Source: Leucoraja ocellata (Eukaryota). Taken from it: a stretch of DNA of 64,000 nt. Shown here piece by piece: positions 4,417-60,982 of the stretch (position 1 is the stretch's first letter; every line of letters begins with the position of its first letter). The position numbers and the translations under genes were made by a program. The notes beneath the pieces are model-generated. The model was given only the letters and a program-made list of their open reading frames with translations, did no database searches and was not told where the DNA came from. The stretch is from contig JAWMAR010000070.1 in assembly GCA_036785375.1 (NCBI GenBank), positions 7,378,001 to 7,442,000 on the forward strand, written 5' to 3'.

Positions 4417-4615
4417 TTTTATACCGACTCCCGGCTTCTCCTGCCCCTCATTGTCTGCCCTCACGTACATTCAACCAATCACTGCCTCCCACGGAGCATT
4501 GGCCGGAGTCAGCCGCGACCTCTCCACCCTCTGCCAAACGTGTCGTTGCATCAGCCGTTAACGTTTAACAAGAACAACGTCATCCCAGCTGCCAGCGGAC
4601 AACCAGGCGCCCAAC
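4417..4615 (-). promoter_or_regulatory. Promoter of A1: TATAAAA (4417-4423), ERSE (4475-4493), second CCAAT, TGATGCAA element
   Basis: Motifs read directly; block nearly identical in all nine copies and placed upstream of a GTGAGT donor and the CAG acceptor before the ATG. Confidence 0.7.
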
Positions 4616-7052: not shown

Positions 7053-7199
7053 GTTCCTGTGGGTGAAACAATGGGTCACCTTATTGCAACTCAGTAGGAT
7101 TCATGATGACATTCCCTGAAGCTGCTGCCACCACACTGGGCAATGTCGCTGTGCAGCTTCTACAGCTCCCGCCTGGTTTAGTTTAAGTTGCTTTGACCT

Positions 7200-7600
7200 G
7201 TCGTGGACCAACAACATTGAAGTGGCAGCCAAGGAGGCACACCAATGCATCTACTTCCTCAGAGACAGAGGAAATACGACAAGTCTCCAATGTCTCTTAG
7301 AAACTTCTACAGATGCACCACAGAGAGCAGACTGTGGGGTTGCATCACAGCTTGGTTTGGGAACAGCTCTGAGCCCAAGATCACAAGATATTGCAGAGTT
7401 GTGGATGGAGCCCAGTCCATCACACAGACCACACTCCCCACCAGTGACTCCATCTACAACCAAAAAAATCAAAGACTTGTCCCACCCCGGTCATTCCTCC
7501 TTCTCCCTGGTCCTGTCTAGCAGACGGTACAGAAGCTTGAAAGCGCGCACCACCAGACTCAGGAACAGCTTCTTCCCCTCTGCTATCAGGCTTCTGAACT
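7200..7600 (+). mobile_element. Rex1/Babar-like non-LTR retrotransposon 3' fragment inside the A2 intron
   Basis: Translations ..AHQCIYFLR.., ..LRNFYRCTTESRLWGCITAWFGN.., ..RRYRSLKARTTRLRNSFFPSAIRLLN, typical of this LINE clade's C-terminus. Confidence 0.7.
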
Positions 7601-7741: not shown

Positions 7742-8014
7742 TTTTATACCGACTCCCGGCTTCTCCTGCCCCTCATTGTCTGCCCTCACGTACATTCAAC
7801 CAATCACTGCCTCCCACGGAGCATTGGCCGGAGTCAGCCGCGACCTCTCCACCCTCTGCCAAACGTGTCGTTGCATCAGCCGTTAACGTTTAACAAGAAC
7901 AACGTCATCCCAGCTGCCAGCGGCCAACCAGGCGCCCCACACATCCTGCTTGTGTCTCCACCACGTCTCGCTTTGGCCACCCATCGGACCAGATGTCCCA
8001 GCCACGCCACGTCA
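7742..8014 (-). promoter_or_regulatory. Promoter of A2: TATA 7742-7748, ERSE 7800-7818, TGATGCAA element, UPRE TGACGTGG (8007-8014)
   Basis: Motifs read directly; conserved with the other copies. Confidence 0.7.
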
Positions 8015-26668: not shown

Positions 26669-26941
26669 TTTTATACCGACTCCCGGCTTCTCCTGCCCCT
26701 CATTGTCTGCCCTCACGTACATTCAACCAATCACTGCCTCCCACGGAGCATTGGCCGGAGTCAGCCGCGACCTCTCCACCCTCTGCCAAACGTGTCGTTG
26801 CATCAGCCGTTAACGTTTAACAAGAACAACGTCATCCCAGCTGCCAGCGGCCAACCAGGCGCCCCACACATCCTGCTTGTGTCTCCACCACGTCTCGCTT
26901 TGGCCACCCATCGGACCAGATGTCCCAGCCACGCCACGTCA
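26669..26941 (-). promoter_or_regulatory. Promoter of A3: TATA 26669-26675, ERSE 26727-26745, UPRE 26934-26941
   Basis: Motifs read directly. Confidence 0.7.
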
Positions 26942-28760
26942 CCACCACAGCCCTTGGCACCTGCGCTGGTTCCACAGTTTATACTCAATCTGAGCCGGCA
27001 GCTGGGATGGCGTTGGATCAATTCTTCCTTCCCAACAACCATCAGGCTGTTGAACACGACACGACACTGAGGTCAACGATGAACGTCTATGGAATGTCCA
27101 AGGTTGCACTAATGCCCCTGTCCCACTTAGGAAACCTGAACGGAAACCTCTGGAGACTTAGCGCCCCACCCAAGGTTTCCGTGCGGTTCACGGAGGTTTT
27201 TGTCTGTCTCCCTACCTGCTTCCACTACCTGCAACCTCCGGCAACCACCTGCAACCTCCGGGAACCACCTGCAACCTCCGGGAACCTTCGGGACGAAACG
27301 TTGCCTATTTCCTTCACTCCATAGATGCTGCTGCACCCGCTGAGTTTCTCCAGCATTTTTGTGTACCTTCGATTTTCCAGTATCTGCAGTTTCTTCTTCA
27401 ACATCAAATAGAACAAGTTGTCCTACAACTTTAGGCTGTGCACGCCACACGAAAGAAGAAGTTGACATGTCTGTCCCGCCATCCCGGGTATTAACCTGGT
27501 GAACCTACGTTGCACTCCCTCAATAGCAAGAATGCCCTTCCTCAAAATGACAGTGAAGTGCTGCCTCTACAGAGACACCCAATAGACCTGATAGAATGGT
27601 ATAAAATGATGAGAGGCGTAGATAGCTGAGATAACCTGAAGCAATTTCCCGAAGGCTTTGGAGACGGTGCAGAAGCAGTTCCCCAGAATGATGTCGGGAT
27701 CGGAGGTTGTTAGTTATATGGACAGGTTGGATAATCTTGGATTAGTTTCTCTAGAACTTCAGATGTTGAGCGGAGACCTGACAGAAGGTAATAAAATTCT
27801 TAAGGGGTTGGACAGGCTAGATGCAGGAACGTTGTTCCCGATGTTGGGGAAGTCCAGAACTAGGGGTCACAGTTTAAGGATAAGGGGGAAATCTTTTAGG
27901 ACCGAGATGAGAAAAACATTTTTCACACAGAGAGTGGTGAATGTGGAATTCTCTGCCACAGAAGGTATTTGAGGCCAGTTCATTGGCTATATTTAAGAGG
28001 GAGTTAGATGTGGCCCTTGTGGCTAAAGGGATCAGGGGGTATGGAGAGAAGGCAGGTACTGGATACTGAGTTTGATGATCAGCCATGATCATATTGAATG
28101 GCGGTGCAGGCTCGAAGGGCCGAATGGCCTCTACTCCTGCACCTATTGTCTATTGTCTACTGTCTATTGTCTATTGAGATAGGAAACATTTAAAGATACA
28201 AGTGGAGGTAGTTACAATAGTTCAGAGACTTTATCTAAAAAATCTCATGGTCATGCAGGGAATTGAGATTATGGATCAGGTGCAGGCAGAGGAGATTAGC
28301 TGAACTTGGCATCATGTTCAGCACGGACCATGTGGGCCGAAGGGCCTGTTCCTGTGCTGTTCCATGTTCTATGTTACATAGTCTTCTCAATCACATCTTG
28401 AGAAGAACATTTTCCAGAGGTGCCCTGGTACCACCAGTGTGACATTCATTGTATCTGCTGCAGTCAATGAGTGTGTTGTGTAGACAGCCAGAGGAGAAGA
28501 TGGGATTTATGTGGAGTTTCATTTTGTAATCATTATTTATTTAATGTCATAGTGTAATAGAGTCATATAGTGATACAGTGTGGAAACAGGCCCTTCGGCC
28601 CAACTTGCCCACACTGGCCAACATGTCCCAGCTACACTAGTCCCACCTGCCTGTGTTTGGTCCATATCCTTCTAAATCTGACCTATACCTGTTCCTGTTT
28701 AACTGTTTCTTAAACGTCGGGATAGTTTCTGCCTCAACAGCGATGAGTTGACCAGAACGA

Positions 28761-28986
28761 GACGTGGTGGAGACACAAGCAGGATGTGTGGGGCGCCTGG
28801 TTGGCCGCTGGCAGCTGGGATGACGTTGTTCTTGTTAAACGTTAACGGCTGATGCAACGACACGTTTGGCAGAGGGTGGAGAGGTCGCGGCTGACTCCGG
28901 CCAATGCTCCGTGGGAGGCAGTGATTGGTTGAATGTACGTGAGGGCAGACAATGAGGGGCAGGAGAAGCCGGGAGTCGGTATAAAA
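28761..28986 (+). promoter_or_regulatory. Promoter of B1: GACGTGG 28761, TGATGCAAC 28850, CCAAT 28901, inverted ERSE 28910-28928, TATAAAA 28980-28986
   Basis: Motifs read directly; conserved in nine copies. Confidence 0.72.
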
Positions 28987-29085
28987 GGAGCGAGCGATGG
29001 CAGGAGATGAGAACAAGACCGACCCCGTCACCCTGTGTGGAGACTCCGGAGCTGGTAACCAACCCTGTGGATCCTTCAAGTGTCT

Positions 29086-29628
29086 GTGAGTGATGGGGGT
29101 GGGATTGTCTCTGTTCACTGTTCCCCCAGTTCAGAAGCCTGATAGCAGAGGGGAAGAAGCTGTTCCTGAGTCTGGTGGTGCGCGCTTTCAAGCTTCTGTA
29201 CCGTCTGCTAGACAGGACCAGGAAGAAGGAGGAATGACTGGGGTGGGACAAGTGGTGGAGTCATAGAGTCACAGCGAGACCTTCGGCTCAACTTGCCCGC
29301 GCCCACCAACGTGTCCCCATCAATACTAGACCCACCTGCCTGCGTTTGGCCCTTACCCCCCTAATCCTGTCCTATCAATGTACCTGTCTAACTGTTTCTT
29401 AATCATTGTGACAGTACCTGCCTCAACTACCTCTTCCGGCAGCTCGTTCCAAACACCCTCCACCCTTTGTGTAAAAAAGTCACCCCTCAGTTTCCCATGA
29501 AATCTTTCCCCCCCTCGCCTTAAACCGATGTCCTCTGGTTCTCGATTCCCCAACTCTGGGCGGGTTCAGGGAATGTCATCATGAATCCTACTGAGTTGCA
29601 ATAAGGTGACCCATTGTTTCACCCACAG
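29086..29628 (+). other. Predicted 5'UTR intron of B1 (GTGAGT...ttgtttcacccacAG), containing antisense Rex/Babar and CR1 fragments; homologous intron in all copies
   Basis: Consensus donor ~100 nt after the TATA box; pyrimidine-rich acceptor 4 nt before the ATG. Alternative donor CTG|GTAACC at 29055. Confidence 0.65.
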
Positions 29629-29632
29629 GAAC

Positions 29633-30172
29633 ATGGGACTGCAGAGATGGATAGGATTCATGGTCCTTGTGGAGATGGTGTGGCAAGTCTCCGTAACTGG
29701 AACAGGTCCGATCTCCAGAGAATGGGGAGAGGAAGCAAACTTGGCCGGGCGGAACGCACGGGCGTATTTCAAAGTCACCAATAAACCGCTTCCAAGATGC
29801 ACGAACGAGTCAGATTCTGATGCCATCAGTCATCACCCATCACCGATTAACAAGAAGGTGCTCGTTGCATCTCTGGGCGGTTCTGTTACGTTGCCATGTA
29901 ATATATCCATCCTTAAAAATCATTACAGGTTTGTTGAATGGATAAAAGATGGTGTTGAAATTGCCCATTTCCATGAGAGAGCGTATGCGCATTATACGGG
30001 ATCTGATGTTCACTGGAAGTTCGTTGATCACGACGTCTATGTGACTCAGGACGCCACGTTGCTCCTGACAGGTGTAAAAGAGGAAGATAAAGGGACGTAT
30101 TCCTGTGTTTGGTCCGTGTATAGAGATAGACCGTTTTGTGAATTATTGATGCAGCTGGTGATCTCTCACTGA
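29633..30172 (+). CDS. Secreted single V-set Ig-domain protein, copy B1 (179 aa)
   Basis: Leader; RNAR-AYFK junction; LGGSVTLPC, VEW, DATLLLTGVKEEDKGTYSC, extra Cys PFCELL; stop after the G strand. Confidence 0.9.
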   Translation: MGLQRWIGFMVLVEMVWQVSVTGTGPISREWGEEANLAGRNARAYFKVTNKPLPRCTNESDSDAISHHPSPINKKVLVASLGGSVTLPCNISILKNHYRFVEWIKDGVEIAHFHERAYAHYTGSDVHWKFVDHDVYVTQDATLLLTGVKEEDKGTYSCVWSVYRDRPFCELLMQLVISH

Positions 30173-31016
30173 TTCAGCAGGGCCAGTCCCAGGGTCAGTA
30201 GCAAAGTCTAGTTTAGTTTAGTTCCGTTCAGAGGTACAACAGGGAAACAAGCCCTTCGGCCCACAGAGTCAACGGGGACCAGTGATCACCCCATATACTA
30301 GTACTATCCCACACACTAGATACAATTTACACTGACCAATTAACCTACAAACCTGCACGTCTCTGGGGTGTGGGACGAAACCGGAGCACCCGGATTCCAA
30401 AGAGGAAGGAAGATTCCAAGGGGAGTTAGGGGCGACCGTGGCTGACAAGGGAAGTCAGGGACACTATCACAATAAAAGAGAACAGGTATAACGTTGCAAA
30501 GATGAGCGGAAAGCCAGGGGATTGGGTAACTCTTTTAAAGAGCAACAGAAGATAACTAAAAAAGCAATACGGGGAGAAATGATGAGGTATGAAGGTAAGA
30601 TAGCCAAGAATAGTAAGGAGGATCGTAAAAGCTTCTTTAGATATGTGAAAAAAATTAGTTCAGACTAAAATTGGACCTTTATAGACTAAAAACTTTGGAT
30701 CCGTCTTCACTAAGGAGAACACAAACAATCTCCCTGATGTATTAGTGGTCAGAGGATCTGGGGACAACGGAGAGCCAGTGGATGTAGTGTACCTGGACTT
30801 GCAGGAAGTATTTGATAAGGTCCCACATAGGAGATTAGTGGGCAAAATTAGAGCACATGGTATTGGGGGAAGGGCCTGTTTCCATATTGTTTGACTCTGA
30901 CACTAAGTAGGGAAGAGTAAAGGTATAAAGATGAGCAGCGTGGAAGGTGTGAGCGTGGATCGCATGCAGTGAGGAGAACTGACCTTGCTTGCTCCGGTAA
31001 ATGTACGTTTAATGTA

Positions 31017-32376: not shown

Positions 32377-34172
32377 GTCCCTTGCAGTCAGAAGCAAGTG
32401 AATTGATCATGGGGAACAAGGACATGGCAGACCAATTGAATAACTACTTTGGTTCTGTCTTCACTAAGGAAGACATAAATAATCTGCCGGAAATAGCAGG
32501 GGACCGCGGGTCAAATGAGATGGAGGAACTGAGTGAAATCCAGGTTAGCCGGGAAGTGGTGGTAGGTAAATTGAATGAATTAAAAGCCGATAAATCCCCA
32601 GGGCCAGATAGGTTGCATCCCAGAGTACTTAAGGAAGTAGCCCCAGAAATAGTGGATGCATTAGTGATAATTTTTCAAAACTCTTTAGATTTGGAAGTAG
32701 TTCCTGAGGATTGGAGGGTAGCTAATGTAACACCACATTTTAAAAAGAGAGGGAGAGAGAAAATGGGGAATTACAGACCAGTTAGTCTAACGTCGGTAGT
32801 GGGGAAACTGCTAGAATCAGTTATTAAAGATGGGATAGTAGCACATTTGGAAAGTGGTGAAATCATTGGACAAGGTCAGCATGGATTTATGAAGGGTAAA
32901 TCATGTCTGACGAATCTTATAGAATTTTTCGAGGATGTAACTAGTAGAGTGGATAAGGGAGAACCAGTGGATGTGTTGTATCTGGACTTCCAGAAGGCTT
33001 TCAACAAGGTCCCACATAAGAGATTAGTATACAAACTTAAAGCACACGGTATTGGGGGTTCAGTACTGATGTGGATAGAGAACTGGCTGGCAGACAGAAA
33101 GCAAAGAGTAGGAGTAAACGGGTCCTTTTCAGAATGGCAGGCAGTGACTAGTGGGGTACCGCAAGGCTCAGTTCTGGGACCCCAGCTATTTACGGTATAT
33201 ATTAATGATTTGGACGAGGGAATTGAATGCAACATCTCCAAGTTTGCGGATGACACAAAGCTGGGGGCAGTGTTAGCTGTGAGGAGGATGCTAGGAGGCT
33301 GCAAGGTGACTTGGATAGGCTGGGTTGGTGGGCAAATGCATGGCAGATGCAGTATAATGTGGATAAATGTGAGGTTATCCACTTTGGTGGCAAAAACAGG
33401 AAATTAGACTATTATCTGAATGGTGGCCGATTAGGAAAGGGGGAGATGCAACGAGACCTGGGTGTCATGGTACACCAGTCATTAAAAGTAGGCATGCAGG
33501 TGCAGCAGGCAGTGAAGAAGGCGAATGGTATTTTAGCATTCATAGCAAAAGGATTTGAGTATAGGAGAAGGGAGGTTCTACTGCAGTTGTACATGCTCTT
33601 GGTGAGACCACACCTGGAGTATTGCGTACAGTTTGGTCTCTTAATCTGAGGAAAGACATTCTTGCCATAGAGGGAGTACAGAGAAGGCTCACCAGACTGA
33701 TTCCTGGGATGTCAGGACTTTCATATGACGAAAGACTGGATAGACTCGGTTTGTACTCGCTAGAATTTAGAAGATTGAGGGGGGATCTTATAGAAACTTA
33801 CAAAATTCTTAAGGGGTTGGACAGGCTAGATGCAGGAAAATTGGTCCCGATGTTGGGGAAGTCCAGAACAAGGGGTCACAGTTTAAGGATAAGGGGGAAA
33901 TCTTTTGGGGCCGAGATGAGGAAAACTTTTTTCACACAGCGTGGTGAATCTCTGGAACTCTCTGCCACAGAGGGTAGTTGAAGCCAGTTCATTGGCTATA
34001 TTTAAGAGGGAGTTAGATGTGGCCCTTGTGGCTAAATGGATCAGGTGGTATGGAGAGAACGCAGGTACAGGATACTGAGTTGGATGATCTGCCATGATCA
34101 TATTGAATGGCAGTGCAGGCTCGAAGGGCCGAATGGCCTACTCCTGCACCTGTACCTATATATGTTTCTATG
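32377..34172 (+). mobile_element. 5'-truncated CR1 LINE (~1.8 kb, RT domain with frameshifts), unique to the B1 unit
   Basis: [51 protein letters not shown]; TSD TTCAG (32372-32376 and 34173-34177); empty site ccttcagcctcg in three other units. Confidence 0.93.
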
Positions 34173-34842
34173 TTCAGCCTCGTGCAAGCAGAAACACTCC
34201 AAAAGGTCACGCTGTCCCAAGGATTCTTCCAGAAGATCGACAAAGGACCTCGTGGGGGCTGCCTTTTATAAGTCCCCGAACCTTGAGGGGCCGAACTACA
34301 TAGGGGTGGTCTCTTTACAATCCAATCAAACATATTAATTACATCAGTATATTATAGACAGTTCCCCAGACCACTAACAGTCTCCCACACATTGTTTCAG
34401 GAGAAGCTTCTGGAAGATGCTAACTTAACTTGAATAATGCAACATTTACCCTGGAATTCAAACAAACCTGCCAGGGCTCAACACTTTAGCCAATCAACAA
34501 ACAGTAGGATAACTGCCTGGCACATTATGTACAATATTTACAATGCTGTTACAGTAATCTAATCAACCATGCATTTACACTTCATTGGAGGTCATCTCCA
34601 TGCATGGAAATCGGTATCAAAACATGGGGGGGGCACAATTCCATGGCGGCACACATGCACACGCGTGCATGCGGCACACACGCGAGGATTCAGCCATGGG
34701 CCCTGTGGACGGTAACATCGGGAACTGACTTGGTTGGTGACCGACTCCGAACTCCAGCAACAGCAGCTTCGTCCGCCCGGAATCGTGGGGCTTGAATCGG
34801 CCCGTTCGCGGGGCCTTTCATCGCCCGGCGGGGGTTTCAACA

Positions 34843-35588
34843 TTGGTATTGATGTGGATAGAGAACTGGCTGGCAGACAGAAAGCAAAGAGTAGGAGTAA
34901 ACGGGTCCTTTTCAGAATGGCAGACAGTGACTAGTGGGGTACTGCAAGGCTCAGTGCTGGGACCCCAGCTATTTACAATATATATTAATGATTTGAATGA
35001 GGGAGTTGAATGCAACATCTCCAAGTTTGCGGATGACACGAAACTGGGGGGCAGTGTTAGCTGTGAGGAGGACGCTAGGAGGCCGCAAGGTGACTTGGAT
35101 AGGTTGGGTTAGTGGGAAAATGAATGGAAGATGCAGTATAATGTGGATAGATGTGAGGTTATCCATTTTGGTGGCAAAAACAGGAAAGTAGATTATTATC
35201 TGAATGGTGGCCGATTAGGAAAAGGGGAGATGCAACGAGACCTGGGTGTCATGGTACACCGGTCATTAAAAGTGGGCATGCAGGTGCAGCAGGCAGTGAA
35301 GAAAGAGAATGGTATGTTAGCTTTCATTGCAAAAGGATTTGAGTATAAGAGCAGGGAGGTTCTACTGCAGTTGTACAAGGTCTTGGTGAGACCACACCTG
35401 GAGTATTGCGTACAGTTTTGGTCTCATAATCTGAGGAAAGACATTCTTGCCATAGAGAGAGTACAGAGAAAGTTCACCAGACTGATTCCTGGGATGGCAG
35501 GACTTTATGGCATACTGAGTTGGATGATCAGTATAATCATATTAAATGGCAGTGCAGGCTCGAAGGGCCGAATGGCCTACTCCTGCAC
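34843..35588 (+). mobile_element. Internally deleted CR1 fragment amplified with the tandem unit (also ~40323-41087, 46796-47548, 53301-54057, 58676-59441)
   Basis: [13 protein letters not shown]...FADDTK...RPHLEYCVQFWS with the same junctions in five units. Confidence 0.88.
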
Positions 35589-35898
35589 CTATTTTCCATG
35601 TTTCTATGGGAGCCTCGATCGCCTCGATGCAGCAGTTTGATTTTAAGCCGCTTGGGCGCTGAAAGGCCCCGCGAACGGGACGATTCTGCCCATAGAAAGC
35701 GTCTGATAAAGTCCGGAACACAAAACATGGGCGGGGGGGGAATCGTCCCCCACCTCCCAAAGCATAGGGGGACATGCCCCCTGTCCCCCCCCCCCAGGAT
35801 TCCTGCCCATGGCGGTCACGATGTCTCCTTCACCGCCGCAGTCTCGACGCCTCTATGATGGCCGCGAAAAACTCAGATCTCTGGGTTGACCAGAACGA

Positions 35899-36124
35899 GA
35901 CGTGGTGGAGACACAAGCAGGATGTGTGGGGCGCCTGGTTGGCCGCTGGCAGCTGGGATGACGTTGTTCTTGTTAAACGTTAACGGCTGATGCAACGACA
36001 CGTTTGGCAGAGGGTGGAGAGGTCGCGGCTGACTCCGGCCAATGCTCCGTGGGAGGCAGTGATTGGTTGAATGTACGTGAGGGCAGACAATGAGGGGCAG
36101 GAGAAGCCGGGAGTCGGTATAAAA
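35899..36124 (+). promoter_or_regulatory. Promoter of B2 (ERSE 36048-36066, TATA 36118-36124)
   Basis: Same motif block as B1. Confidence 0.7.
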
Positions 36125-42405: not shown

Positions 42406-42631
42406 GACGTGGTGGAGACACAAGCAGGATGTGTGGGGCGCCTGGTTGGCCGCTGGCAGCTGGGATGACGTTGTTCTTGTTAAACGTTAACGGCTGATGC
42501 AACGACACGTTTGGCAGAGGGTGGAGAGGTCGCGGCTGACTCCGGCCAATGCTCCGTGGGAGGCAGTGATTGGTTGAATGTACGTGAGGGCAGACAATGA
42601 GGGGCAGGAGAAGCCGGGAGTCGGTATAAAA
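42406..42631 (+). promoter_or_regulatory. Promoter of B3 (ERSE 42555-42573, TATA 42625-42631)
   Basis: Same motif block. Confidence 0.7.
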
Positions 42632-48865: not shown

Positions 48866-49091
48866 GACGTGGTGGAGACACAAGCAGGATGTGTGGGGCG
48901 CCTGGTTGGCCGCTGGCAGCTGGGATGACGTTGTTCTTGTTAAACGTTAACGGCTGATGCAACGACATGTTTGGCAGAAGGTGGAGAGGTCGCGGCTGAC
49001 TCCGGCCAATGCTCCGTGGGAGGCAGTGATTGGTTGAATGTACGTGAGGGCAGACAATGAGGGGCAGGAGAAGCCGGGAGTCGGTATAAAA
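48866..49091 (+). promoter_or_regulatory. Promoter of B4 (ERSE 49015-49033, TATA 49085-49091)
   Basis: Same motif block. Confidence 0.7.
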
Positions 49092-55373: not shown

Positions 55374-55599
55374 GACGTGGTGGAGACACAAGCAGGATGT
55401 GTGGGGCGCCTGGTTGGCCGCTGGCAGCTGGGATGACGTTGTTCTTGTTAAACGTTAACGGCTGATGCAACGACACGTTTGGCAGAGGGTGGAGAGGTCG
55501 CGGCTGACTCCGGCCAATGCTCCGTGGGAGGCAGTGATTGGTTGAATGTACGTGAGGGCAGACAATGAGGGGCAGGAGAAGCCGGGAGTCGGTATAAAA
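55374..55599 (+). promoter_or_regulatory. Promoter of B5 (ERSE 55523-55541, TATA 55593-55599)
   Basis: Same motif block. Confidence 0.7.
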
Positions 55600-60756: not shown

Positions 60757-60982
60757 GACGTGGTGGAGACACAAGCAGGATGTGTGGGGCGCCTGGTTGG
60801 CCGCTGGCAGCTGGGATGACGTTGTTCTTGTTAAACGTTAACGGCTGATGCAACGACACGTTTGGCAGAGGGTGGAGAGGTCGCGGCTGACTCCGGCCAA
60901 TGCTCCGTGGGAGGCAGTGATTGGTTGAATGTACGTGAGGGCAGACAATGAGGGGCAGGAGAAGCCGGGAGTCGGTATAAAA
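60757..60982 (+). promoter_or_regulatory. Promoter of B6 (ERSE 60906-60924, TATA 60976-60982)
   Basis: Same motif block. Confidence 0.7.

What the first reader, a model, noticed from the sequence alone, without database searches (positions are those of the whole stretch)
28761..28986. Every copy has an unfolded-protein-response / secretory-cell type promoter
Seen: about 52-70 bp upstream of TATAAAA all nine copies carry an exact CCAAT-N9-CCACG (CCAATcactgcctcCCACG, antisense to the gene), plus a second CCAAT, TGATGCAAC and TGACGT; GACGTGG is present in all but A1. A2 and A3 also keep an exact TGACGTGG (8007-8014, 26934-26941). Known: CCAAT-N9-CCACG is the ERSE bound by NF-Y with ATF6/XBP1; TGACGTGG is the UPRE bound by XBP1s/CREB3-family factors; TGATG-AA is the C/EBP-ATF4 element. 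Inference: the genes are tied to all three UPR arms or to a professional secretory cell programme (plasma-cell-like or exocrine), rather than to an Ig octamer promoter. Caveat: the copies are recent duplicates, so their identity is not independent evidence of function.
Basis: partly seen in the sequence, partly recalled or inferred. Interest (0 to 1): 0.8.

Follow-up and report, generated by a model that had tools for sequence, protein, structure and literature searches.

The report
ER-stress-type promoter on skate V-genes
Nine copies of a skate gene for a small secreted antibody-like domain each carry an exact match to the DNA switch that normally turns on protein-folding helpers under secretory stress, but whether that switch works here is still untested.

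Summary
All nine copies carry the identical CCAATCACTGCCTCCCACG, antisense to the gene and 52-70 bp upstream of TATAAAA. All nine also have a second CCAAT, TGATGCAAC and TGACGT. GACGTGG is in 8 of 9 and TGACGTGG in 2 of 9.

For one ancestral promoter this is more than chance. The ERSE arises in 0.12% of shuffles. Two or more of four published UPR motif classes arise in 25 of 100,000 shuffles and in 0 of 2,131 background windows.

The nine copies still count as about one observation, but not because they are recent duplicates. V exons of the two subfamilies differ by dS of about 0.9-1.06, while a roughly 1-kb 5' unit is 98-100% identical. That unit holds the promoter, exon 1, a transposon-bearing intron and the signal/pro region, so it is homogenised.

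Function is untested:
- The single RNA run laid had no reads on the exons.
- The TSS is unmapped.

'All three UPR arms' overreaches. An NF-Y/ATF6-XBP1-type ERSE promoter is my leading reading, at about 0.4.

First readers noted the same ERSE promoter in neighbouring windows of this genome (s1-884933, s1-884931).

The parts
28784..29754 (+). Homogenised 5' unit of copy c4. It holds the proximal promoter, exon 1, intron 1 and the first 126 bp of exon 2 (short UTR, signal peptide, start of the pro-region). It is 98-100% identical among the copies.
   Evidence: With c2 left out, variable sites are 4/196 in the promoter, 0/106 in TATA plus exon 1, 25/517 in the intron and 6/150 in the exon-2 5' part.
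28910..28928 (-). Exact ERSE-I, CCAAT-N9-CCACG, antisense to the gene. It reads CGTGG-N9-ATTGG on the sense strand.
28901..28905 (+). Second CCAAT box, in sense orientation, 4 bp from the CGTGG of the ERSE.
28849..28858 (+). CTGATGCAAC, an exact match to the published ATF4/C/EBP-ATF consensus (A/C)TGA(T/C)GCAA(T/C).
   Evidence: consensus taken from passages of PMC10700025.
28821..28826 (+). TGACGT, a CRE half-site.
   Evidence: Found in 15% of shuffles, so it carries little weight.
28761..28767 (+). GACGTGG, the UPRE core without its first T. It lies at the upstream edge of the shared cassette and is absent from c1.
28937..28941 (+). ACGTG core, 8 bp downstream of the ATTGG.
28980..28986 (+). 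TATAAAA box.
   Evidence: Found in 0.175% of shuffles.
28987..29085 (+). Exon 1. Its 5' end is unmapped; the TATA box predicts a TSS near 29009-29015. It is probably non-coding. The donor GTGAGT starts at 29086.
   Evidence: NCBI skate models join this exon to exon 2.
29629..30172 (+). Exon 2 with the whole 179-aa ORF (ATG 29633, stop 30170-30172): signal peptide, pro-region and V-set Ig domain.
4475..4493 (+). ERSE of copy c1 (gene on the - strand).
7800..7818 (+). ERSE of copy c2 (gene on the - strand).
26727..26745 (+). ERSE of copy c3 (gene on the - strand).
36048..36066 (-). ERSE of copy c5.
42555..42573 (-). ERSE of copy c6.
49015..49033 (-). ERSE of copy c7.
55523..55541 (-). ERSE of copy c8.
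60906..60924 (-). ERSE of copy c9.
8007..8014 (-). Exact UPRE TGACGTGG of c2, upstream of the shared cassette.
26934..26941 (-). Exact UPRE TGACGTGG of c3, upstream of the shared cassette.

Best explanation
Each gene of this skate array encodes a secreted, stand-alone, nectin/PVR-like V-set Ig domain. Each is driven by the same compact proximal promoter of about 200 bp with a TATA box. That promoter is kept uniform across the array as part of a roughly 1-kb 5' unit that is homogenised, most likely by gene conversion.

The promoter core is an NF-Y-type CCAAT box that forms an exact reverse-oriented ERSE-I with a CCACG nine bases away. A C/EBP-ATF (ATF4-type) site and a CRE half-site lie upstream.

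Proposed mechanism (inferred, not shown): NF-Y sits on the CCAAT. When the secretory pathway is loaded or a secretory cell differentiates, an ER-membrane-derived bZIP docks on the adjacent CCACG. That factor could be ATF6(N), XBP1s or a tissue-specific CREB3L relative. Transcription of the whole family would then rise together with ER capacity. Which tissue opens the locus must be set by other inputs, namely chromatin, the C/EBP site or distal elements.

Shown: the motifs, their geometry, their non-random co-occurrence, the homogenised cassette and the secreted nature of the product. Inferred: factor binding, UPR responsiveness and the TSS.
For: - The ERSE is exact in 9 of 9 copies, 52-70 bp upstream of TATAAAA.
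- The ERSE arises in 0.12% of 20,000 shuffles.
- Two or more of four externally defined UPR motif classes arise in 25 of 100,000 shuffles and in 0 of 2,131 background windows. In the whole window these classes occur only at these promoters.
- The orientation equals that of the validated Creld2 ERSE, whose product is also secreted on ER stress (PMC10018036 passages). ERSEs act bidirectionally (PMC3672785 passage).
- ATF6 binds CCACG only when NF-Y holds the CCAAT, and XBP1s also binds it (PMC8301375 passages).
- The CCAAT flank is CCAATCA, which fits the consensus CCAAT(c/g)a (PMC4982600 passage).
- The promoter is CpG-island-like: CpG o/e 0.91 and GC 58%, against 0.49 and 46% in the background.
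- The product has an N-terminal hydrophobic leader and a V-set Ig fold, with no KDEL-type end.
- ER-bound bZIPs are known to drive cargo genes directly, for example CREB3L3 with ATF6 on CRP and SAP (PMC6616197 passage).
- The cassette is present with 0 differences over 401 bp in a contig of a run labelled as another organism, X5. A contig of a third label, X6, has 2 differences over 354 bp.
Against: - There is no functional or expression evidence. The only RNA run laid (X7, poly(A), about 7.3 million records read, about 6% of the run) had zero depth on exon 1 and exon 2.
- The TSS is unmapped. NCBI's Leucoraja models start their CDS at the ATG at 28997, only 17 nt after the first T of the TATA box. 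If that rests on RNA evidence, it conflicts with a TATA-directed start.
- The nine copies are one observation. The promoter is not significantly less variable than the adjacent transposon-bearing intron (4/196 against 25/517, p=0.13). Nothing therefore shows selection on the motifs themselves.
- Most exact ERSEs in a genome are probably chance. The human genome holds 535 (PMC5890977 passage).
- There is a single ERSE here, whereas chaperone promoters have several (PMC5890977 passage).
- The second CCAAT lies 18 bp from the first. Two NF-Y trimers are said to need at least three helical turns (PMC4982600 passage), so it could compete with the ERSE complex.
- Known ERSE genes are mostly ER-resident machinery, not cargo.
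- The motif family was chosen after inspection.
Confidence: 0.4

Rival explanations
1. This is an ordinary tissue-specific CCAAT/TATA promoter. NF-Y, a C/EBP factor (on TGATGCAAC) and a CREB/ATF factor (on TGACGT) drive it in one tissue, for example liver or gut. The CCACG nine bases from the CCAAT is fortuitous or serves another CGTGG/ACGTG binder. The genes do not respond to the UPR.
For: - CCAAT, CRE half-sites and C/EBP sites are generic. TGACGT arises in 15% of shuffles, GACGTGG in 9.5% and two CCAATs in 8%.
- TGATGCAAC reads equally well as a C/EBP site (my knowledge).
- A 13-bp palindrome GTTAAACGTTAAC next to it (28834-28846, 9 of 9 copies) resembles an HNF1 site; that consensus is recalled and was not tested.
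- The genes encode cargo, unlike most ERSE genes.
- The absence of RNA reads in the one run laid fits strict tissue restriction.
- Most exact ERSEs genome-wide are unlikely to be functional (535 in human, PMC5890977 passage).
Against: - An exact 10-base ERSE at the right distance from a TATA box arises in 0.12% of shuffles.
- Its co-occurrence with an exact ATF4 consensus is rarer still: two or more classes in 25 of 100,000 shuffles.
- If NF-Y binds this CCAAT, ATF6(N) would be expected to dock on a CCACG at N9 whenever it is active (PMC8301375 passage).
Confidence: 0.38
2. The motifs hitch-hike. The 28760-28990 segment is carried along in a gene-converted unit, and the real start of transcription or the controlling element lies elsewhere. 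That could be an upstream start that includes the ATG at 28997, or a distal enhancer or locus control region. On this reading TATAAAA and the ERSE have no role.
For: - The whole 1-kb unit is homogenised, including intron pieces that have other transposon-like copies in the window and very high read depth. Identity therefore says nothing about function.
- NCBI models begin their CDS 17 nt after the TATA box.
Against: - The upstream edge of the shared unit (about 28760-28784) leaves only about 200 bp for a common promoter, and upstream flanks differ between copies.
- TATAAAA arises in 0.175% of shuffles.
- The exon-1 reading frame is not conserved in the Narcine homologue, and the Rhinoraja model starts at MGLQ. 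The 28997 ATG is therefore probably an annotation extension.
- Promoter plus exon 1 are less variable than the intron (4/302 against 25/517, p=0.0097).
Confidence: 0.12
3. The family is wired to all three UPR arms at once: ATF6 and XBP1 through the ERSE, XBP1s/CREB3 through a UPRE, and PERK-ATF4 through TGATGCAAC.
For: - The ERSE and the ATF4 consensus are exact in 9 of 9 copies. A UPRE is exact in c2 and c3.
- If the TSS lies at or upstream of 29007, exon 1 also carries a 26-codon upstream ORF that would end at the exon junction 2 nt before the main ATG (with read by eye). Upstream ORFs of this kind are typical of genes under eIF2alpha control (my knowledge).
Against: - The UPRE is missing in 7 of 9 copies and lies outside the shared cassette.
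- GACGTGG is not the full UPRE.
- The ATF4 site is single and ambiguous with a C/EBP site.
- The upstream ORF depends on an unmapped TSS.
Confidence: 0.08

Closest known systems
ERSE-I promoters of ER chaperone genes (Hspa5/GRP78, Hsp90b1/GRP94, Calr)
   Same: Exact CCAAT-N9-CCACG in a proximal CCAAT/TATA promoter. The definition and the NF-Y/ATF6/XBP1s binding logic come from passages of PMC8301375.
   Different: There is one ERSE per promoter rather than several. The product is a secreted V-domain without an ER-retention ending, not ER machinery. It is a multigene array rather than a single conserved gene. Inducibility is untested.
Creld2 promoter ERSE
   Same: The same reversed orientation, written CGTGG-N9-ATTGG. 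It sits in a CpG-rich promoter, and the product is secreted and induced by ER stress through ATF6 (PMC10018036 passages).
   Different: CRELD2 is a ubiquitous, conserved, single-copy gene whose ERSE is conserved across species. Here cross-species conservation could not be checked and expression appears restricted.
CREB3L3 (CREBH)/ATF6-driven acute-phase cargo genes (CRP, SAP)
   Same: Secreted cargo genes activated directly by ER-membrane bZIP factors (PMC6616197 passage).
   Different: I did not verify the element type of those genes in the passages read. The tissue and the factor are unknown here.
C/EBP-ATF response element (ATF4 site) of integrated-stress-response genes
   Same: CTGATGCAAC fits (A/C)TGA(T/C)GCAA(T/C) exactly (PMC10700025 passage).
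   Different: It is a single site that may simply be a C/EBP site. There is no evidence of ATF4 dependence.
Ig/TCR V-gene promoters with octamer plus TATA
   Same: A TATA-containing promoter in front of a leader and V-domain gene.
   Different: There is no octamer, even with one mismatch, within +-220 bp of the ERSE in 0 of 9 copies (the octamer letters are recalled). Leader and V domain share one exon behind a separate first exon.

Membership tests
ERSE-I (ER stress response element) | Sequence CCAAT-N9-CCACG with exactly nine spacer bases | tested here: met
   Present in 9 of 9 copies as an identical 19-mer.
ERSE-I (ER stress response element) | Lies in the proximal promoter, upstream of the transcription start | tested here: inconclusive
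   It lies 52-70 bp upstream of TATAAAA. The TSS is not mapped: the RNA run X7 gave zero depth, and NCBI models start their CDS at 28997.
ERSE-I (ER stress response element) | CCAAT bound by NF-Y | not testable with these tools
   Only the flank CCAATCA could be compared with CCAAT(c/g)a (PMC4982600 passage).
ERSE-I (ER stress response element) | CCACG bound by ATF6(N)/XBP1s, with transcription induced by ER stress | not testable with these tools
   This needs reporter, EMSA/ChIP or stress RNA-seq experiments.
ERSE-I (ER stress response element) | Conserved in orthologous promoters | not tested
Contigs of runs under three organism labels show the cassette: one carries the whole element with 0 differences over 401 bp, one covers only part of it with 0 differences, and one has 2 differences over 354 bp, one of which I could not place. 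How far those organisms are from the window's is unknown.
ERSE-II | ATTGG-N-CCACG | tested here: not met
   0 matches in the window.
UPRE (XBP1s element) | TGACGTGG/A, equivalent to (C/A)CACGTCA | tested here: not met
   Exact in only 2 of 9 copies (c2, c3), about 265 bp upstream of TATA and outside the shared cassette. The other copies have only GACGTGG.
ATF4 / C/EBP-ATF response element | (A/C)TGA(T/C)GCAA(T/C) | tested here: met
   CTGATGCAAC is present in 9 of 9 copies. It arises in 0.38% of 100,000 shuffles. Binding was not tested.
Ig octamer V-gene promoter | ATGCAAAT a few tens of bp upstream of TATA | tested here: not met
   0 of 9 copies have it, with up to 1 mismatch, within +-220 bp of the ERSE.
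V-set Ig domain (gene product) | Pfam V-set match and an Ig V fold | tested here: met
   PF07686 at E=4e-8 and 33.9 bits, against a cut-off of 26. The AF2 model has block pLDDT means of 66-92, mostly 76 or more, over about residues 71-179. Best folds are the D1 domains of CD155, nectins and TIGIT, at E=6e-9.

The most novel reading that the evidence does not exclude
A large germline array of fast-diversifying, secreted single-V-domain genes in batoid fishes is run by one homogenised promoter cassette. The array would hold tens of copies over more than 300 kb if the neighbouring first-reader notes hold. The cassette would plug the whole repertoire directly into the ATF6/XBP1 secretory-capacity programme. 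This would be a non-rearranging, plasma-cell-like or exocrine 'cargo follows ER capacity' design, with gene conversion keeping the regulatory half uniform while selection diversifies the binding half.
Probability: 0.15. Interest if true: 0.7.

Novelty: new member of a known kind. Interest (0 to 1): 0.42.

Why it matters
ERSEs are known mainly from genes for ER machinery. A working ERSE on every member of a diversifying, secreted V-domain family would show cargo genes wired directly to the secretory-capacity pathway in a cartilaginous fish. It would also hint at the cell type that makes these undescribed proteins.

The hypothesis can be tested cheaply with 5'-RACE, a reporter carrying ERSE point mutations, and two orthologous upstream sequences.

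If the ERSE proves inert, the finding reduces to a tidy CCAAT/TATA promoter inside a gene-converted cassette. The more interesting object is then the gene family itself: old V exons, dN greater than dS, and a homogenised 5' unit.

Tried and rejected
Steps that led nowhere:
- Expression and TSS. The look-up of sequencing runs listed no holder on record as RNA. Of the four runs laid, X1, X5 and X6 behaved as DNA: their contigs cover promoter and intron, and no exon-exon joint is among the 15 of 745 joints listed. The poly(A) RNA run X7 had zero depth on the exons.
- A metagenome scan with the motif arrangement found nothing.
- Literature on the gene family. Two searches returned 0 papers. Two searches for ERSE with cartilaginous-fish terms listed nothing relevant. 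In one search, the 8 papers listed of 3,695 do not hold ERSE. In one search, the 8 listed of 43 are about skiing, and I did not see the other 35.
- The classic ERSE paper PMC148335 is not held.
- A within-window test for selection on the motifs has no power. Only 4 variable sites lie in 196 promoter columns, none in a named motif, and the chance of that is about 0.4 by my arithmetic.

Readings considered and rejected:
- The cassette is a transposon or LTR promoter. There are nine cassettes for nine genes in the window. Read depth is only about 5-13 times the flank, against 10^5-10^7 for the neighbouring SINE bins.
- An MHC-type S-X-Y module. The spacing does not fit; this rests on recalled knowledge and was not tested.
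- A pseudogene array. All nine ORFs are open, and dN exceeds dS.

Limits to note:
- The first identity profile of the intron was inflated by a deletion in copy c2. I repeated it without c2, so 8 of 9 copies were used.
- Supplements were closed. The tables of PMC5890977 and PMC10700025, which may say how many promoter-proximal ERSEs respond to stress, were not seen.
The protein searched is the single-exon ORF of exon 2.

Full report
**What is there**

The window holds nine copies of one gene. Copies c3 and c4 lie head to head.

The copy under the finding, c4, is built as follows:
- TATAAAA at 28980-28986.
- A first exon ending at 29085, followed by the donor GTGAGT.
- A 543-bp intron.
- A second exon from 29629 that carries a complete 179-aa ORF, with ATG at 29633 and stop at 30170-30172.

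The ORF begins with a hydrophobic leader (MGLQRWIGFMVLVEMVW...). A stretch predicted as disordered follows, and then a V-set Ig domain:
- Pfam PF07686 matches at E=4e-8, above its cut-off.
- The AlphaFold model has block pLDDT means of 66-92, mostly 76 or more, over about residues 71-179, and below 50 for residues 1-53 and 60-71.
- The best structural matches are the D1 IgV domains of CD155/PVR, nectins, TIGIT and CD226, from E=6e-9.

All nine ORFs are open, at 170-179 aa.

Relatives with the same architecture were found only in batoid fishes:
- Seven proteins in all: six 'uncharacterized' proteins of Leucoraja erinacea and one of Rhinoraja longicauda.
- A 29%-identical 'nectin-1-like' protein of Narcine bancroftii.
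- No window copy is identical to an annotated Leucoraja protein; the best matches are 94.5% and 88%.
- I found no paper on the family.

**The observation**

- The 19-mer CCAATCACTGCCTCCCACG occurs nine times, against 0.13 expected and at most 2 in 100 shuffles.
- It is always antisense to the gene, and it ends 52 bp and starts 70 bp upstream of TATAAAA.
- A sense CCAAT, TGATGCAAC and TGACGT are in 9 of 9 copies.
- GACGTGG is in 8 of 9, missing only from c1.
- TGACGTGG is in 2 of 9, at 8007-8014 and 26934-26941.

**Is it more than chance?**

The nine copies cannot be counted as nine trials, so I asked about one 251-bp promoter (28740-28990).
- The ERSE arises in 0.12% of 20,000 dinucleotide-preserving shuffles.
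- TATAAAA arises in 0.175%, TGATGCAAC in 0.28%, GACGTGG in 9.5% and TGACGT in 15%.
- All four reader motifs together arise in 0 of 20,000.
- The other 56,041 bp of the window contain no ERSE and no GACGTGG.

These are ERSE-I, ERSE-II, UPRE (C/A)CACGTCA and ATF4 (A/C)TGA(T/C)GCAA(T/C).
- Copy c4 holds two classes: ERSE-I, and CTGATGCAAC at 28849-28858. Two or more classes arise in 25 of 100,000 shuffles.
- Copy c2 holds three classes, which arise in 0 of 100,000 shuffles.
- None of 2,131 background windows holds any class.
- In the whole window these classes occur only at these promoters.

The co-occurrence is therefore not trivial. The motif family was still chosen after looking at the sequence.

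**Why nine copies are still one observation**

That is not what the sequence shows.
- Between the A and B subfamilies, the V-region synonymous divergence is 0.88-1.06. Between c1 and c2 it is 0.42.
- The first 42 codons have dS = 0 in most pairs.
- The stretch 28784-29754 is 98-100% identical among copies.

With c2 left out because of an intron deletion, the variable sites are:

| Segment | Variable sites |
|---|---|
| Promoter | 4 of 196 |
| TATA plus exon 1 | 0 of 106 |
| Intron | 25 of 517 |
| 5' part of exon 2 | 6 of 150 |

The intron carries pieces with other, diverged copies in the window. It also shows read depths 10^2-10^3 times those of the cassette, so these pieces are transposon-derived. 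They are nearly as uniform as the promoter. The promoter alone against the intron gives p=0.13; promoter plus exon 1 against the intron gives p=0.0097.

The simplest reading is concerted evolution, that is gene conversion, of a roughly 1-kb 5' unit placed in front of old, diversifying V exons. The unit's higher GC (57% against 46%) would fit GC-biased conversion; that is an inference. Identity therefore gives no site-level evidence that the motifs are selected.

**Evidence from elsewhere**

The sequencing-run search listed no holder on record as RNA. I laid four runs.
- Three behaved as DNA (X1, X5, X6).
- A 477-letter contig of X5 (organism C) lies on 28758-29158 with 0 differences over 401 letters.
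- A contig of X6 (organism D) lies on 28805-29158 with 2 differences. One is listed, G>T at 28959. The other is not among the rows shown.
- X1 (organism A) matches c4's V exon exactly over 132 letters, so it is probably the window's own species.
- Cassette depth is about 5-13 times that of the unique flank. This argues against a dispersed repeat.
- I do not know how far organisms C and D are from the window's species, so this is weak support at best.
- The poly(A) RNA run X7 (about 7.3 million records, about 6% of the run) gave zero depth on exon 1 and on exon 2. The family is not broadly or constitutively expressed in that sample. The TSS remains unmapped.

**How it most likely works**

The geometry is that of a classical ERSE promoter.
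- ATF6(N) binds CCACG only when NF-Y holds the CCAAT nine bases away, and XBP1s binds the same CCACG (PMC8301375 passages).
- ERSEs act in both orientations (PMC3672785 passage).
- The validated Creld2 element is written CGTGG-N9-ATTGG, exactly the sense-strand reading here. CRELD2 is itself secreted on ER stress (PMC10018036 passages).
- The CCAAT flank CCAATCA fits CCAAT(c/g)a (PMC4982600 passage).
- ER-membrane bZIPs can drive cargo genes directly, as CREB3L3 with ATF6 does on CRP and SAP (PMC6616197 passage).

I therefore commit, at about 0.4, to the following reading. This is a compact NF-Y/TATA promoter whose ERSE lets ATF6, XBP1s or a CREB3L relative raise the whole family together with secretory capacity. 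Tissue choice is set elsewhere.

**What speaks against it**

- No binding or induction has been shown.
- There is a single ERSE, whereas chaperone genes have several (PMC5890977 passage).
- Most exact ERSEs in a genome are probably inert; the human genome has 535 (same paper).
- The second CCAAT (28901-28905) is only 18 bp from the first. Two NF-Y trimers are said to need three helical turns, so it may compete with the ERSE complex.
- NCBI's Leucoraja models begin their CDS at the ATG at 28997, only 17 nt after the TATA box.

I think that ATG is an annotation extension:
- The Rhinoraja model starts at MGLQ.
- The Narcine N-terminus is unrelated.
- A leader peptide would normally be N-terminal.

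This is inference only.

'All three arms' is too strong:
- The exact UPRE is in 2 of 9 copies, outside the shared cassette.
- GACGTGG is not the full element.
- TGATGCAAC may simply be a C/EBP site.

**Comparison with what is known, and verdict**

As a sequence element this is a canonical ERSE-I, so it is a new member of a known kind. What is unusual is its host: a multigene family of secreted, positively selected V domains rather than ER machinery.

The octamer reading is excluded (0 of 9 copies).

The finding is real and gives a clean, cheap hypothesis. Its functional claim rests on motif matching alone, so I score interest at 0.42. The gene family and its homogenised 5' unit are the more remarkable objects. 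First readers noted the same promoter in neighbouring windows of this genome (s1-884933, s1-884931; not tested here).

Noticed in passing
window 29755-30172 and the matching V regions of c1-c9: Within subfamilies the V region has dN greater than dS: c4-c5 0.193/0.068, c2-c3 0.132/0.052, c7-c8 0.181/0.081. Between subfamilies dS is about 0.9-1.06, while the first 42 codons have dS=0 in most pairs. This points to diversifying selection on an old V exon behind a homogenised leader.
   Followed up: partly
window 28834-28846 (and the same place in all nine copies): A perfect 13-bp palindrome, GTTAAACGTTAAC, sits 2 bp upstream of the ATF4/C/EBP site. It resembles an HNF1-type site (consensus recalled, not tested). 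A CAGCTG E-box lies at 28812-28817.
   Followed up: no
window 28997-29085 and 29007-29084: Exon 1 is open in two frames. One is the frame NCBI uses (MAGDENK...). The other is a 26-codon frame from the ATG at 29007. It is a possible upstream ORF if the TSS lies at or before 29007.
   Followed up: partly
window 7120-7475 (copy c2): Copy c2 lacks most of the intron that the other eight copies share. BLAST homology jumps from 7475 to 7120.
   Followed up: no
window 28560-28740, 29140-29600, 30200-30600: SINE-like and other repeat pieces flank and interrupt the unit. Their bins reach depths of about 10^5-10^7 in the two deep DNA runs, X1 and X6. They also draw reads on both strands in the RNA run.
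   Followed up: no
window 32382-33404 (+), with related fragments at 34792-35640: A LINE-type reverse-transcriptase ORF lies between gene copies (PF00078, E=3e-27).
   Followed up: partly
window 28901-28928: Two CCAAT boxes in opposite orientation bracket the CGTGG, as CCAAT-N4-CGTGG-N9-ATTGG. They are 18 bp apart, which is closer than the three helical turns reported as needed for two NF-Y trimers (PMC4982600 passage).
   Followed up: no
   Followed up: no
window 28959: G>T is the only promoter difference listed in the other runs. It is fixed in the X6 contig (168.9 of 168.9) and minor in X1 (59.1 of 3762.8). It lies between the ERSE and the TATA box. 138 further rows were not shown.
   Followed up: no
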